Shown one piece after another: positions 12,193 through 27,300 of a stretch of 64,000 nt of DNA. The stretch spans positions 377,208,001 to 377,272,000 of the forward strand of contig CM097882.1 of the NCBI GenBank assembly GCA_044892505.1, given 5' to 3'. The notes under the pieces were generated by a model, which worked only from the letters and a program-made list of their open reading frames with translations, had not been told where the DNA came from and did not search any database. The position numbers and the translations under genes are program-made. How positions within the stretch are numbered: the stretch's first letter is position 1; the number at the start of each line of letters is the position of its first letter. Origin of the DNA: Schmidtea nova. Its lineage: Eukaryota.

Positions 12193-15100
12193 CATAATTA
12201 TCTTTTTGTTTCACCTTTGATCTTTTTTATTATTAATATCAATAAATCCCATAATGGATGACTATTTAATTATTATTATTTATTTAATTATTATTATTTT
12301 ATTTAATATTTTAGTTCGTATCAATATTTTGTTTTTAAAAATAATTAAAATTAAAATTAATTATGTAGCCAATCTTTTACATATTTGTTCAGTTTTGCTA
12401 TTTCGCCGATAAAAGCAAATAGTTCGTTGTAAATATATATAATTATATAATTCACAAATTTCTGTTTAATTATAGTTTAGCTCTCAGTTTCTTGAATAAT
12501 TCTCATTTTGCTTTAACTCATTTAACGCAGTTATTTTCACAAACTATGACAAAATTATTAAATATTAAAGTCAATTAAAATTCAAAGAAATAACATTCGA
12601 CAAGATATTACTGAAATTTGTATTTATTGGAAAGATCTTTTGATCCCTCGTTTGTTAGAATGATTATAAATCAATTAAATAAAATAAAAGCACATAAAAA
12701 TGATTATTGATGATGCGATTATTACTATTGAGAAATTCGTCTTGTAGTTTTATTAAATGAGATAGCAGCAGATTTCTTATTTTTATTAATTTATCTCAGC
12801 ATGTTTAACTTTATCCTTAGCAATACATGCAATTAAAATTTCAATGTATGTAAATAAGATTTTAAATAAATTTATAGGAATATAAATTAAAATTTTTATG
12901 AAATCAAAAATATATTTTATTTTAATTTATTTAAGCATACAATTATATTTTATTATTTATTTAGATGCCTGGATTACGAAATTAAAGCCGAGGTATTTTA
13001 AGAAAATAGTTGAAGTAATAACTAATTGTTTTTATCAAGAAAAGTGTAGTTTTAAATTGTTCAAATAAGATTTAAATTAAATTACCATTTTATATAAAGA
13101 CTATAAATCAAAAATGACTTTTATATTTCACACAGATTTTTAAGTGTGCATTTAATACACACTTGAAAGGATGTGCGGATATTTGTGTGCTATATATAAA
13201 AATCAGTTTTGATCTATAGTCTTTATATTTTATTATAATTTCTGAAATTGAAATAAAGAGATCAAGGGAGAAAAAAATTAATAATGTAAAATTAAATTGT
13301 AATTATAACAAAAAATATTAATATAAAATTAGATTCTCAGCCTAGTCATTCAGTATTAAATACACAAATTTGCAGGTTTTAATGTATGATAATTATAAGG
13401 GTTTACAAAATACTCCAGAACACCAAGATCATCAATAAATATATTATTATTATTGAATCTGGAATTATCCTAGATTGATTTTATTATAGAAATAGTAATA
13501 GATAAGTCATTAAATCATTAATCTTCTTCATATTTGATAGTTTTACAATTTTTTTTCATTTTTCATACATAAGATAAAAAAATATATACTTTTGATTTAT
13601 TTTGAAAAAAACAACATTTGTCGGATGACTTATTTGTTTGTCGAAACTAGTATGCCAAATGTTGTTTTTTTCAAAAGATATTTCGAGTGATTGAAATAAT
13701 GAAGCTAAGGCAGTCGGGTGCGCTTGCAAACAGTTTCTGTTGAACACCTTTAGTGCGCAGAGGCGAAAATGAAATTCATACGCCATGTTTGCAAGTTACA
13801 GATTATCTGTAGGACCTTGCATATTCAAAGGATGTTTTATCCAGTGTACCAGGTATAGTATATAACAAAAATCTTTCGACTTTGTTTTATACTTACCTGG
13901 CGCGGAGAGAAATTTTCGCGTCGCCTGCAGAGCACTGATGAGAGCTAAAAGCTCGAAACTAGTTTGCTATTGGGGATTTGCACTGGGTGTCATAAAAAAT
14001 CACAAGCTTTACTTGTTTTGATTTATTGTTTGAAAAATTGAAAATAAATAAAACAATTGATCATTCTGGCAGTTTTAGCCAGTGGGTTGAAAATCAGGTA
14101 AAAGACCACAAAAATATAATTGGTTTTGTAGTACCATTTTAGGTAAAGTTGAATTTTATTGCTATGTTCCAATTTTAAAATAAAATTGATAAAAACTTTA
14201 ATGAAATAAAAACTTTGAGTAAATATTTTGCGATGATTCTCCCAAATGAATATATTAATTTTTAAATACTTCTATTGATCTGATTTTTCAAAAAAATACA
14301 AATTCAACTCATTAAATATTTGTTTAAATATTCTAAATATTTTTGTACACGTGACATTACCTTTGCAATTTTACTTTGTTTAAAACAGAAGTGGGCACAT
14401 ATGAGGCAAAATAGAGCCACATGTGGATACACAAATTCACTATTTTTTATTTAATTTATTTGTATATTTTCACAATTCACATATAAAAGCATAAGAAAAC
14501 ATTAAAAAATCATTATTTTAAAATTTTAATAATAAAATAAAAATAAAATTATACAGAAATAAATTTAAATAGAAAAATTACCATACACAATCACCCAAAA
14601 GGTTAAGTTGAAAAAAATGCAATAAAAAATTTTAATGGGAGCCTCACTCGACTCGACGAAGAGCCACATTTGCACACTGTTGCTTTAATATATTCCAATA
14701 GTGATATCCGTAATTATAAAATTTATTTATAATCCGTCAAAAATGGCAAAAAAATCACAAACAGGAATTATTTATGCGTGCAACCGACTTACGGACGTAC
14801 ATGCGATGGTAATTATGTAATTGAATATTGCGGCTATTGGATGTGTCTTATTTGTTTGAACAATTATAAAATTCATTTAAAAATAACTGAATCTTAATTT
14901 AAATATGCTAAAGAATAAAATATTTAAGTACTCATAAATTCATTTCCAACAGTTTCTTTCATTGTGTTCAATCAGGAATTTTACAAATAGTTTATTCTCG
15001 TCAGTTATCAATTTCTAAATCTTTATACATTTCTGTATTCAACTTATATTTTCAGATTCTAATCTTACTTCCATAAACCTGGGTTTAAATATTAAGGAAG

Positions 15101-24300: not shown

Positions 24301-27300
24301 TTCGACAAAATACTGACCCACAAAGAATGTAGGATTTCTACCATAGATCAACACTTCCATATTTACAGAGAATAAAGAATAGATAAACGATTTACCAAAG
24401 AAGTGTACAATTCTGAAAAATGCGCAATATGTATAGATGTCATAAATAGTCACAGATACCACGATAATGATATCAAGAAAATAAATTCCAATCTGAGAAG
24501 ACAGAAAGAATTTCAAAAGAAAAAGTATTTCCACCTTCGAATCCTATTTACTAATAACCAAATAAATTTTAAGATCATCAAAAAGCTTAATTTCATTGAC
24601 TTCCAATTCGTTTAGCATATAGATCTAGGACAATCAAGTACACTCTGGCGAACAAAACAAGAAAAGATAATACTTATTAAATGGAAAACTGCTAGACACA
24701 TAAGGAAATATGCTTCCAAAAGAACGTTTTCTATAATATCATGTTAAGAAATGCAAAGAAATTAACATTTAAAGCATCCTTAGGATTTTGTATCAAAGAA
24801 TTAGAAAGTATTTGCATCCTGGTGAAAAATAATATTTATACAGACATATTCAACAGTGTCAGATAGAAAAATGAAAAACTTTAATATCAGATAATATATT
24901 GACCAGAAAAAAACAATAAAAGAATCTCCGACTTAAGGAGGCTATTTTCATTTGAGACCAATACCCAAAATTCAACTTTAAAAAAGATGCCACTGAAATT
25001 GCCCACCTTCTAATTTGTTAATAAGATGTTAAATTTAGAAAAAAACCTTTTGAAGAAATTTTTAATAATTTTAAGTTTAAAACATTTTTTCACAAAGCCA
25101 AAAGAGAAAAGGGGGAAGAAGCCAAAATGAAAAAAGAAAGTAAAGAAATATTTTAATTTTATAGAGATTTTATCATAAAATTAAGTTAGTTATAAACTTA
25201 AATTTAATAAAAGGTTAAAATATAATATAAATATATATTTGAAAGTTTACAGATTATCTGATTACCTTGAATATTCAAGTGATGTGATATTCAGTGTACC
25301 AGGAAAAGTACTCAATAAAGTTATTTCAACTTTGTTTTATACTTACCTGGCGTGAAGAGCAATCTTCGGGTCTTATGTATAGCACTGACGAGAGCCCAAA
25401 GCCTGAAACTAGTCTCTTATTAGGAATTTGCATTGGGTATCACAAAGCTTTACCTTTTCTTAATTAATAAATAATAATGGTTATCAAATATTTAAATTAA
25501 ATTAAATGATAATAAAAATACACACTTAAAAATGCTGTTCCTAAAGTTCGTGTGCCTTAAAAAAAGAAATTTGATCTATAATCTTTATTTAAAAAATTTA
25601 AATTAAAAAAATTAATTTAAATCTTTTTTAAATATGTAAATATTTCTTTTTCTTTCAATTTCTCAAAGATTTATATATTCAAAACCTTCTTTTCATAATT
25701 TTTGATTTTTTCTAAATTAATAATAATTGAAAAGATTTCCGAATAGATAGAGAAGTGATAAAAGATGAAAATATAACAGTAAAGTTTATTTAAAATTTAA
25801 AACTGTCAAGTTTACAGTGTAATATACTTTTATAATTCGAATGCTATTACGTGCTTGTTAAGGTGTCATTTTCATTTTGTTCCTATCCATTCGTTTTCGA
25901 TGCAAAAGCAAAATCCAAATTGTTGCAAGTCGAAGCTGGCTTGTTTATGCGAAATGCAGTTCTAGAAACTCATACAAATCTGATTATGTCCATACTCAAT
26001 GCTCAAGAGTCAGGCATTATCAACATGGAAACTCCGTTTTTTGAAATCGGCGTTAATCGAGAAACAGTTCTTCAAGACACATTAAAAGCACTTGAAAAAG
26101 CATCTCAAAAGGAATTTAAGAAGCCATTAAAAGTTTATTTACTTAATATATAAATTGCTTTTTTAAACTAATACTTTTAGATTTCCTTTTCAAATGAAGA
26201 AGCAGTCGATGACGGCGGAGTTGTGAAGGTAATACTTTCGATAATTATTGTTTAAATAAAAATATTATATTTTATAATTTAATTATTCAAAAAATAATTC
26301 GGAATCCTTATTACAAAAATAAATTATTTCATCTATATTTTTAATGAAAACCTTGAAAGATCCAAATACGTATAATAAAAATACGTAAAAAATGTGCATA
26401 TTAATCTCAATAAAAATATTTCAATATAAAACGGTATATTGACGAGCTAGAGAGTGATCCACAATATAAAACTTAGAATTGAATCAGAATGTTCACAAGG
26501 GTATTTTGACGTTTTTAAATACAAAAAAAGCTCTAAAAACTATTATGATCTCCAACAAAGTGTGAAAATTACTTAAATTGCTATTTAACATTAACTAAAA
26601 TTATTAAGATTAAAACTAAACATTTCATTTTTTTTCTTTATTTAAACGTTTTTCTAAATGACATTTATTCATTTTTACTAAATAATTACTATCTTTGTAC
26701 GCGTGGTTAAATTTAAATATTTTTTTAGTTTAACTCAAATTTTTGTATTTTTCAATTTTAAAAAGTTTTTCTCTTATTCTAAATAACTTATTTTATTTTA
26801 TAATTAAAATTAATTTTATGGTGTGATGTTATTTTAACTAAGTTTTATATGTTTTCCCTGCCTAAGTTGTGTTACATTTTAGGCAAAGGAGTTCAAAAAT
26901 ATTTTATTTTTTTATGTTATTTGTTATACAGATGGAAAAAAAACTTTTATAAATTTTTAAAGAACTTTTTTACTTTTTTACTTCCGAAATTATTTGTGCC
27001 TTGTTTATTTATTTTATTTATCAGAATTAATAAAATTATAATTTAGATTAAATTTTAATTATTTCATTGACTTAAAATAGCTTTTTAAAAGTTCTGATTT
27101 ACAAAAATTGTATACTGCCGGAAGAGTGCTGATTTTAATGAATTCTCGGAGGCTAGTCGCTCTATAGAAATCTTTTTAAGGAATTTGGTATTTTGTATTT
27201 GTCACAATTTCCATTGTTAAAATACTAGAAAGTGCTTTAAAAATTATTTAATACTAATAATACTCTTTAAAAAAAATTTATTTATTTTATTTAGATTTTT

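What the first reader, a model, noticed from the sequence alone, without database searches (positions are those of the whole stretch)
13889..13901. Exact U1 snRNA 5' end (ATACTTACCTGGC) heads the hammerhead module
Seen: a 13-nt match to the canonical U1 5' end in both copies (13889, 25339), then a stem-loop, the ribozyme and ATTTGCA(C/T); about 95 nt upstream is also conserved. Established: this segment of U1 reads 5' splice sites, and snRNA promoters lie upstream. Inference: possibly a U1-derived ribozyme-bearing RNA. Alternatives: an antisense CAG|GTAAGTAT donor, or just one arm of the upstream hairpin.
Basis: partly seen in the sequence, partly recalled or inferred. Interest (0 to 1): 0.7.

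Follow-up and report, generated by a model that had tools for sequence, protein, structure and literature searches.

The report
U1 fragment inside hammerhead retrozyme repeat
The exact U1 start sequence is real, but it lies inside two decayed copies of an abundant 380-base self-cleaving-ribozyme retroelement (a "retrozyme") as a roughly 20-base piece of the host's own U1 gene, predicted to be locked in a hairpin, and is not the head of a U1-like gene.

Summary
ATACTTACCTGGC is exact at 13889 and 25339, and each site is followed by a GNRA hairpin and a hammerhead core.

Both sites are single, decayed insertions of a ~380-nt non-LTR retrozyme.
- The U1-like-plus-hammerhead module has at least 3,640 exact copies in this 1.25-Gb genome.
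- Copies are dispersed or in 380-382-bp tandem arrays, share a fixed 3' end, and are often 5'-truncated.
- An intact family member matches Rfam type I hammerhead (27.6 bits, E=2e-4). Its helix III is a palindrome, so cleavage probably needs a dimer.

The genome has real 157-nt U1 genes. The repeat shares only TTT+ATACTTACCTGGCGCGG (20 nt) with them. Nothing else upstream or in the body is similar.

The snRNA genes carry an AAATG motif near -66 and a TATA-like box near -30. The repeat lacks the first at that distance. Its young subfamily has the second.

The U1-like bases are predicted to pair with an upstream arm. That arm varies between subfamilies, while the U1-like arm does not.

Most likely this is a captured U1-gene fragment kept as a structural arm. 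A transcription start at this A remains possible (~15%). No RNA data could be obtained.

Earlier agents of this scan reached the same reading for this family on other windows.

The parts
13596..13639 (-). Inverted duplicate of the element's own 5' end (unit ~227-266), upstream of copy A.
   Evidence: BLAST of the natural unit from L025 against the window. The sequence carries the same ATGTTGTTTTTTT variant as the direct copy.
13640..13654 (+). 15-nt filler GTCGAAACTAGTATG, resembling the 3' part of the hammerhead (unit ~158-171), at the complex 5' junction.
   Evidence: Read directly and compared with the unit. Published Penelope-type insertions have complex tandem/inverted 5' junctions (PMC8557442).
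13655..14018 (+). Copy A: a nearly full-length, ~95% identical single unit of the young subfamily of the ~380-nt retrozyme (unit ~245-380 plus 1-224).
   Evidence: nhmmer E=1.4e-118. The 3' end ...AAGCTTTACTTGTT matches the family's fixed 3' terminus.
13782..13833 (+). Conserved block I (unit 368-39; contains TTGCAAGTTACAGATTATCTG). Its function is unknown.
   Evidence: Lowest divergence between subfamilies: 0.074 differences per site, 2 variable sites in 52.
13849..13900 (+). Predicted hairpin P1. The 5' arm CCAGGTATAGTATATAAC... is donor-like and contains TATATAA. The 3' arm is CTTTGTTTT plus the U1-like ATACTTACCTGG.
   Evidence: MFE folds. P(unpaired) of the U1-like bases is 0.02-0.18. No covariation support.
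13886..13905 (+). 20-nt stretch identical to the true U1 genes of this genome (-3 to +17).
   Evidence: Best local alignment against L001 and L003 U1 loci is exactly this 20-mer. Exact pattern hit.
13901..13920 (+). Hairpin P2, an 8-bp stem capped by GNRA (GAAA here; GCAA in the older subfamily).
13921..13976 (+). Type I hammerhead. Core CTGATGA is at 13935-13941, helix II at 13942-13954, GAAA at 13955-13958, and the predicted cleavage site at 13964|13965. In copy A it is decayed: GUU instead of GUC, and one helix I mismatch at 13931.
   Evidence: An intact family unit matches RF00163 at 27.6 bits, E=2e-4. Copy A itself scores only 15.6 bits against RF00008. Alignment.
13980..13993 (+). 3' strand of the predicted long-range helix P0 (GCACTGGGTGTCAT), pairing with 13834-13847.
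   Evidence: Folds. In the older subfamily GUGAUAUCCAGUGU pairs with GCACUGGGUAUCAC over 14 bp.
25212..25463 (+). Copy B: a 5'-truncated, old and decayed copy of the older subfamily. It is ~75-80% identical to the young unit, and its best genomic relatives are 79-87% identical.
   Evidence: nhmmer E=5.7e-59. The 3' end ...AAGCTTTACCTTTTCTTA is followed by TAA-rich DNA.
25336..25352 (+). U1-identical stretch in copy B (TTT + ATACTTACCTGGCG). Its upstream partner arm reads CCAGGAAAAGTA, which is not a splice donor.
25371..25426 (+). Hammerhead of copy B. The GUC site is intact (cleavage would be at 25414|25415), but helices I and II are decayed.

Best explanation
Both sites are dead single insertions of an abundant ~380-nt non-coding retroelement of the animal 'non-LTR retrozyme' kind.

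How the family works (shown only where stated):
- Tandem units are transcribed (inferred).
- Each unit carries a type I hammerhead whose helix III is only the palindrome ACUAGU, so two ribozymes probably pair to cut after GUC (window equivalent 13964|13965). The sequence features are shown; dimer use and cleavage are inferred.
- This would release 380-nt monomers that fold into a highly paired RNA. By analogy with published retrozymes, these would be circularised and copied back into DNA by a Penelope-like reverse transcriptase (inferred).
- Integration has a fixed 3' end, often in (TAA)n tracts, with frequent 5' truncation and tandem or inverted arrays (shown).

The U1 piece:
- The U1 5' end is a 19-20-nt piece of the host's own U1 gene (-3 to +16/17) embedded 75 nt upstream of the cleavage site (shown).
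- It was probably captured once, before the sampled subfamilies split (inferred).
- It forms the 3' arm of a ~20-bp hairpin. This hairpin, a GNRA hairpin and a long-range helix branch from a junction capping hammerhead helix I (predicted).
- In that position it is not free to read splice sites, and it does not head an snRNA gene.
For: Family and mobility:
- At least 3,640 exact copies of the U1-like + hammerhead module, against 0 for the reversed control pattern.
- 3,956 exact copies of the 29-nt ribozyme.
- Tandem arrays of 380-382 bp and dispersed copies.
- Fixed 3' end, variable 5' starts, (AAT)n flanks.

Ribozyme: RF00163 at 27.6 bits, E=2e-4, type I topology with a zero-length helix III loop.

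Fold: -120 kcal/mol, z=-7.6.

U1 relation:
- True U1 genes exist at 111 bits and 157 nt.
- The shared stretch is exactly 20 nt and nothing more.
- There is no Rfam U1 hit here.
- There is no AAATG motif at the snRNA distance. The best PWM hit scores 8.3 at -117, about 0.5 such hits are expected per unit, and it is not conserved in the older subfamily.

Pairing: the U1-like bases have P(unpaired) 0.02-0.18 in natural young and old copies, linear or circular.

Transcript start: 0 of 68 non-full-length copies start at the U1-like A.

Literature:
- Non-LTR retrozymes with type I hammerheads in 150-450-bp tandem repeats are reported in many animal phyla, platyhelminths included (PMC7229834).
- A Penelope-like origin has been proposed (bioRxiv 10.64898/2026.07.22.740005).
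- U1 pieces have been added repeatedly to non-autonomous retroelements (SINEU, PMC4494074).
Against: - No RNA evidence: cleavage, circles and transcript ends are all untested.
- The helices have no covariation support, because the copies are decayed repeats.
- The match includes 3 T's that lie upstream of U1 +1 in the gene. This fits DNA-level capture of a start site better than capture of mature U1 RNA, although the chance of TTT here is ~5%.
- The young subfamily has TATAW at -29/-30 from the U1-like A, as do 6 of 8 real snRNA genes sampled. The background chance is 3.8%.
- The U1-like arm carries no subfamily-level change, while its pairing partner carries five: 33/526 versus 116/540 differing cells. 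This hints at a constraint on the sequence itself and not only on pairing.
- That hint is weak. Zero variable sites in 13 has p~0.24 given 37 variable sites in 357, and the cells are not independent.
- A link to an autonomous Penelope-like element was not tested.
Confidence: 0.72

Rival explanations
1. The unit carries its own core promoter copied from a U1 gene, with a TATA-like box at about -30 and the U1 start region. Transcription would begin at the U1-like A. The first hammerhead cut would then release a ~76-nt capped RNA whose U1 5' end is free, because its pairing partner lies upstream of the start. Downstream units would be cut into 380-nt monomers.
For: - Identity to the U1 genes runs from -3 to +17, so it includes non-transcribed T's.
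- TATAW starts at -29/-30 in the young subfamily and copy A, as in 6 of 8 real snRNA genes sampled (6 of the 7 U1/U5 genes). Background chance is 0.038.
- Conserved block I lies at about -55 to -120, where snRNA promoter elements sit.
- The U1-like arm is invariant between subfamilies.
- There is a precedent: newt hammerhead satellite 2 is reported to have an snRNA-type promoter (Coats et al. 1994, as cited in PMC2220036). In Penelope the pLTR holds the transcription start (PMC8557442).
Against: - There is no AAATG motif at -65 to -68. The ancestral sequence there is AAGTG at -57.
- The older subfamily has TATTTAA, which is not TATAW.
- The TATA-like box is automatically produced by complementarity of the hairpin arm to TTTTATAC.
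- None of 68 truncated copies starts at this A.
- In this 75% AT genome, TATA-like strings are common.
Confidence: 0.15
2. The selected feature is on the other strand. GCCAG|GTAAGTAT is a perfect 5' splice donor that acts in antisense or host read-through transcripts, through U1 snRNP binding, exonisation or protection from premature polyadenylation.
For: - The minus strand reads a consensus donor in all subfamilies, since it is the complement of the invariant arm.
- Penelope-like elements are known to carry and keep introns (PMC8557442).
Against: - A donor needs only ~9-11 nt, but identity with U1 continues through GGCGCG(G), which has no role in a donor.
- The hammerhead and the fixed 3' end define the + strand as the element's sense strand.
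- The + strand donor-like arm is not conserved: the older subfamily has CAGGAAAAG.
- No splice junction data could be obtained.
Confidence: 0.07
3. The resemblance is chance or convergence: the segment is simply a hairpin arm that happens to equal the U1 5' end.
For: - It is one arm of a predicted hairpin.
- No other part of the unit resembles U1.
Against: - The chance of a 16-nt match of this composition in one unit is about 6e-9 (my arithmetic).
- The match follows this genome's own main U1 variant and not its other U1 variants.
Confidence: 0.03
4. It is a bona fide short variant U1 snRNA gene.
For: - Exact 5' end.
- A hairpin follows it.
- An AUUUG string downstream.
Against: - No RF00003 hit at E<=10.
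- No Sm site or stem-loops I-IV.
- The AUUUGCAC is the strand of a long-range helix.
- Thousands of retroelement copies carry it.
- Real U1 genes are present elsewhere.
Confidence: 0.01

Closest known systems
Animal non-LTR retrozymes (Cervera and de la Pena 2020, PMC7229834)
   Same: - Type I hammerhead in a 150-450-bp, low-GC (37%) non-coding unit.
- From single copies to long tandem arrays.
- Highly self-paired predicted RNA.
- Thousands of copies.
- Reported for platyhelminths in general.
   Different: - This unit embeds a 19-20-nt piece of the host U1 gene. No such feature was found in the papers searched.
- Circular RNA and cleavage were not tested here.
Minimal hammerheads of Penelope-like elements / newt-type double hammerheads
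   Same: Helix III is reduced to a palindrome (ACUAGU with a zero-length loop in the Rfam alignment), which implies action as a dimer. Insertions show 5' truncation, tandem and inverted copies, and a microsatellite bias, as described for Penelope-like elements (PMC8557442).
   Different: Helices I and II are of canonical size, with an internal loop in helix I. No reverse-transcriptase ORF is attached, and the link to an autonomous partner was not tested.
SINEU elements of crocodilians (Kojima 2015, PMC4494074)
   Same: Non-autonomous retroelements that acquired U1-derived sequence.
   Different: In SINEU the U1 or U2 part is a long head at the 5' end of the element. Here only 16-17 transcribed nt are present, and they are internal (position ~250 of 380).
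Newt satellite 2 (hammerhead repeat with an snRNA-type promoter; Coats et al. 1994, cited in PMC2220036)
   Same: A hammerhead-bearing ~330-bp repeat connected with snRNA gene features.
   Different: In the newt the link is a functional promoter. Here the link is the U1 start region, plus in the young subfamily a TATA-like box, and promoter function is unproven. The original paper was not available to read.
U1 snRNA gene (RF00003)
   Same: Identical -3 to +17, including the splice-site-reading 5' end.
   Different: No stem-loops I-IV, no Sm site, no upstream AAATG motif, and no Rfam match.

Membership tests
U1 snRNA gene (RF00003) | Covariance-model match at or above the gathering score (69.5 bits) | tested here: not met
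   No hit in the window at gathering. No U1 hit even at E<=10 on 13780-14040. True U1 genes elsewhere score 87-112 bits.
U1 snRNA gene (RF00003) | 5' end AUACUUACCUG | tested here: met
   Exact at 13889 and 25339.
U1 snRNA gene (RF00003) | Body similarity (stem-loops, Sm site) to the genome's own U1 | tested here: not met
   Local alignment of U1 nt 18-157 against the unit scores 19, versus shuffles at 17 (p~0.2).
U1 snRNA gene (RF00003) | Upstream promoter elements shared with the genome's snRNA genes | tested here: inconclusive
   The AAATG motif with G at -65 to -68 (6 of 8 genes) is absent at that distance. A TATA-like box at about -30 is present in the young subfamily only. Only U1, U5 and U6 loci were available, because the U2 and U4 searches failed.
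Hammerhead ribozyme type I (RF00163) | Conserved core CUGANGA...GAAA, with helices I-III in type I order and an NUH cleavage triplet | tested here: met
   An intact family unit aligns over the full model, with GUC and all core bases. In the window, copy A has GUU and a helix I mismatch, and copy B has decayed helices.
Hammerhead ribozyme type I (RF00163) | Score at or above the Rfam gathering threshold (34 bits) | tested here: not met
   27.6 bits, E=2e-4. The shortfall comes from the minimal helix III.
Hammerhead ribozyme type I (RF00163) | Self-cleavage | not testable with these tools
   Needs in-vitro transcription of an intact unit, as monomer and as dimer.
Animal non-LTR retrozyme | Short (150-450 bp), low-GC, non-coding unit with a type I hammerhead, from monomers to long tandem arrays | tested here: met
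   380-382-bp period, arrays of tens of units, 37% GC.
Animal non-LTR retrozyme | Highly self-paired monomer RNA | tested here: met
   MFE -120 kcal/mol, z=-7.6, 0 of 100 shuffles as stable. This is a prediction only.
Animal non-LTR retrozyme | Expressed as linear and circular monomer RNA | not testable with these tools
Animal non-LTR retrozyme | Mobilised by, or derived from, Penelope-like elements | not tested
   Only indirect signs were seen: 5' truncation, tandem and inverted junctions, microsatellite targets.
snRNA-headed SINE (SINEU-like) | snRNA-derived sequence forms the 5' head of the element | tested here: not met
   Full-length copies start at unit ~225. The U1 piece is at unit 94-110, and 0 of 68 truncated copies begin at it.

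The most novel reading that the evidence does not exclude
Each young unit is a small gene with a U1-derived core promoter. Transcription would start at the U1-like A, and the hammerhead 75 nt downstream would release a ~76-nt capped RNA with a free, authentic U1 5' end but no Sm site or U1 protein sites. Made from thousands of units, such an RNA could occupy 5' splice sites, or titrate factors that recognise the U1:donor duplex, in this animal.
Probability: 0.08. Interest if true: 0.8.

Novelty: new member of a known kind. Interest (0 to 1): 0.3.

Why it matters
As it stands, this is an ordinary abundant retrozyme family with one unusual feature: a fragment of the host's U1 gene start, kept unchanged in every subfamily sampled. 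It shows that snRNA fragments can be captured by this class of ribozyme-bearing retroelements. It also gives a marker for dating the family.

It would matter more if the fragment marks the element's transcription start. No promoter was named for animal retrozymes in the papers searched here. If so, thousands of units would each emit a short RNA carrying the splice-site-reading end of U1.

The analysis also yields a first sketch of the snRNA promoter layout of this genome: AAATG near -66 and a TATA-like box near -30.

Tried and rejected
- **Rfam.** The window at gathering threshold gave nothing. The permissive scan of copy A gave only a weak Hammerhead_3 hit, whose type III reading I rejected. 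The type I reading gives perfect helix I pairing (AUAGCA/UGCUAU) and a GUC site in intact copies, and Rfam confirms it.
- **tRNA-type promoter.** I considered a tRNA-derived Pol III promoter in the 5' half of the unit, because of A/B-box-like strings. ARAGORN and Rfam found no tRNA.
- **Sm site and 3' box.** I rejected ATTTGCAC as an Sm site because it is the strand of a predicted long-range helix. I rejected AAGCTTTAC as an snRNA 3' box because it is the retroelement's 3' terminus.
- **Promoter motif.** A PWM for the snRNA upstream motif found only a chance-level hit in the unit.
- **Covariation.** Counting on 32 copies showed no signal beyond shuffles.
- **Other species.** The metagenome scan of the composite pattern found nothing and the IMG/VR scan gave one chance hit. 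The 19-mer gave 11 chance hits in metagenome contigs. Some of these contigs came from gut-metagenome assemblies. They looked microbial, only the flanks of each match were read, and none was pursued.
- U2 and U4 genome searches failed. The newt promoter paper is not held.
Full report
**1. The observation**

ATACTTACCTGGC is exact at 13889-13901 and 25339-25351 on the + strand. With up to two mismatches only one further site appears in 64 kb.

The two neighbourhoods align from about 95 nt upstream to about 130 nt downstream. Each has the 13-mer, a 20-nt GNRA-capped hairpin, a CTGA(T/C)GA...GAAAC core and ATTTGCA(C/T). The description is correct.

**2. What the two sites are**

The window lies in a 1.25-Gb genome with three very large chromosomes. 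Earlier notes of this scan call it a flatworm; I did not verify that.

- A 216-nt query around 13889 found full-length matches at 94-97% identity all over the genome. Many loci hold head-to-tail runs with a 380-382-bp period.
- A composite pattern (U1-like 12-mer, 30-40 nt, CTGANGAG, 8-14 nt, GAAACTAGT) has 3,640 exact matches, against 0 for the reversed control.
- The 29-nt ribozyme alone has 3,956 exact matches. So nearly all ribozymes of this type are preceded by the U1-like segment.
- Using a natural unit from L025 as ruler, copy A covers unit positions ~245-380 plus 1-224 at 95% identity (13655-14018). It is preceded by a 15-nt ribozyme-like filler and a 44-nt inverted duplicate of the element's own 5' end.
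- Copy B (25212-~25463) is a 5'-truncated, 75-80% identical copy. Its closest relatives are only 79-87% identical, so it is an old insertion of an older subfamily.
- An HMM of the family finds only these two copies in the window.

**3. Anatomy of the unit**

*Ribozyme.* An intact unit matches Rfam Hammerhead_1 (type I) over the whole model at 27.6 bits, E=2e-4, below the 34-bit gathering score.
- Helix I is AUAGCA/UGCUAU, extended by UCUCC/GGGGA across an internal loop.
- Helix II is GAGC-CAAAA-GCUC.
- The site is GUC.
- Helix III is only ACU/AGU with no loop. The palindrome AAACUAGU cannot close in cis, so I infer cleavage in dimers, as published for newt-type and Penelope-type hammerheads.
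- In the window the site maps to 13964|13965 and 25414|25415. Copy A has GUU and a helix I mismatch, and copy B has damaged helices I and II. Neither window copy looks active.

*Fold.* The 380-nt monomer is predicted to fold very stably (-120 kcal/mol, z=-7.6). A junction caps hammerhead helix I, and three elements branch from it:
- a long-range helix, GUGAUAUCCAGUGU with GCACUGGGUAUCAC in the older subfamily;
- hairpin P1;
- the GNRA hairpin P2.

*Ends.* Dispersed copies share a 3' end...CACAAAGCTTTAC(C)TTGTT(A). This is often followed by (AAT)n tracts. Their 5' starts vary widely.

These features fit the published animal non-LTR retrozymes, which are reported for platyhelminths among other phyla (PMC7229834). 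They also fit the insertion style of Penelope-like elements (PMC8557442; bioRxiv 10.64898/2026.07.22.740005).

**4. Relation to the real U1**

The genome has canonical U1 genes of 157 nt scoring up to 111.8 bits. They sit in clusters with U5.

- Their sequence begins ATACTTACCTGGCGCGGTTTAACC.
- The best local alignment between these loci (-150 to +217) and two tandem units is exactly TTTATACTTACCTGGCGCGG, 20 of 20.
- The U1 upstream 150 nt and the U1 body beyond nt 17 align to the unit no better than shuffles (p=0.17-0.77 and ~0.2).
- The older subfamily has ...GGCGCGA, giving 16 transcribed nt.
- A match of this length and GC content cannot be chance (about 6e-9 per unit by my arithmetic). 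It also goes well beyond what a splice-donor complement needs.

The segment therefore derives from U1. But only a fragment is present, and it is internal: unit position 94-110, which is about position 250 of the linear element.

**5. Promoter test**

I compared eight distinct snRNA upstream regions: five U1, two U5 and one U6.
- Six have AAATG with its G at -65 to -68.
- Six have TATAW starting at -32 to -29, against a background of 0.038.

For the retrozyme:
- It has no AAATG at that distance from the U1-like A. Its best PWM match is at -117, with a score expected 0.5 times per unit, and it is not conserved in the older subfamily.
- The ancestral string at -57 is AAGTG.
- The young subfamily and copy A do have TATATAA at -29/-30. 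The older subfamily has TATTTAA.
- This box is also what complementarity to TTTTATAC in the hairpin would produce.
- None of 68 non-full-length copies begins at the U1-like A.

A U1-type gene is thus not supported. A start site at this A is not excluded.

**6. The hairpin and conservation**

In natural young and old copies, linear or circular, the U1-like bases are predicted to be paired with P(unpaired) of 0.02-0.18. Their partner is CCAGGUAUAGUAU.

- That partner looks like a splice donor only in the young subfamily. The older one reads CCAGGAAAAG or CCAGGAAUAG. A conserved + strand donor mimic is therefore rejected.
- Among 30 non-young copies, the 5' arm differs from the reference in 116 of 540 cells and has 5 subfamily-level variable sites.
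- The U1-like arm differs in 33 of 526 cells and has 0-1 variable sites, as low as the ribozyme.
- This suggests the U1-like sequence itself is kept. The evidence is weak, though. The cells are not independent, and zero variable sites in 13 has p~0.24 at the family's overall density.
- Pair counting shows no covariation beyond shuffles, as expected for neutrally decaying copies.

**7. Interpretation**

The best reading (0.72) is a retrozyme that captured a U1-gene start fragment before its subfamilies split and keeps it as a hairpin arm beside the ribozyme. Precedent for U1 pieces joining non-autonomous retroelements exists (SINEU, PMC4494074).

Rivals:
- an internal promoter with its start at this A (0.15; precedents are the newt satellite 2 snRNA-type promoter, cited in PMC2220036, and the transcription start in the Penelope pLTR);
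- a selected antisense donor (0.07);
- chance (0.03);
- a true U1 variant (0.01).

**8. Limits**

- No more genome sequence could be fetched.
- U2 and U4 searches failed.
- Scans of metagenome and viral collections gave only chance hits.
- I built and printed no consensus. All rulers are natural copies.

**9. Earlier notes of this scan**

Notes s1-399578, s1-388934, s1-399581 and s1-411042 describe the same family on other windows with the same main reading. I re-derived each point used here independently.

Noticed in passing
L001 1081-1235 and 1501-1657; L003 1501-1657 and 1918-2071; L005 1501-1653: The genome carries several divergent U1 genes, all scoring 104-112 bits, with different 5' ends: ATACTTACCTGG, AAACTTACTTGG and AAACTAACCTGG. 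They sit side by side and next to U5 genes. Variant U1s with altered splice-site-reading sequences may be worth a separate look.
   Followed up: partly
L001, L003, L039, L041, L073 (upstream of U1, U5, U6): Candidate snRNA promoter layout for this genome: AAATG with its G at -65 to -68 in 6 of 8 genes, and a TATAW box starting at -32 to -29 in 6 of 8 (6 of the 7 U1/U5 genes; window background 3.8%).
   Followed up: partly
L049, L058, L061, L067, L069 and others (3' junctions); window 25464-25490: Many retrozyme copies end directly in (AAT)n/(ATT)n microsatellite. L069 has it on both sides. This suggests a target preference like that reported for some Penelope-like clades.
   Followed up: partly
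G000:C1:1154666-1163123 (places listed): Two long retrozyme arrays of opposite orientation meet head to head, with 5 units on the minus strand followed by 18 on the plus strand at a 382-bp period. This is a large inverted structure.
   Followed up: no
G000:C2:333381460-333423212 (L073-L078): A tandem array of at least 48 identical U6 genes, with periods of 739 and ~1567 bp, each with a tRNA gene ~100 bp away on the opposite strand.
   Followed up: no
G000:C2:312959679-313028186 and 314005095-314031634: Two long tandem arrays (~2.5-kb period, tens of copies) of a lower-scoring U1 type (86.6-91 bits). Sequence was not fetched.
   Followed up: no
window 13596-13654; L019 ~1834-1864: 5' junctions of some copies carry an inverted duplicate of the element's own 5' end, plus short filler derived from the ribozyme region. 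This suggests template switching during insertion.
   Followed up: partly
I did not examine them.
   Followed up: no
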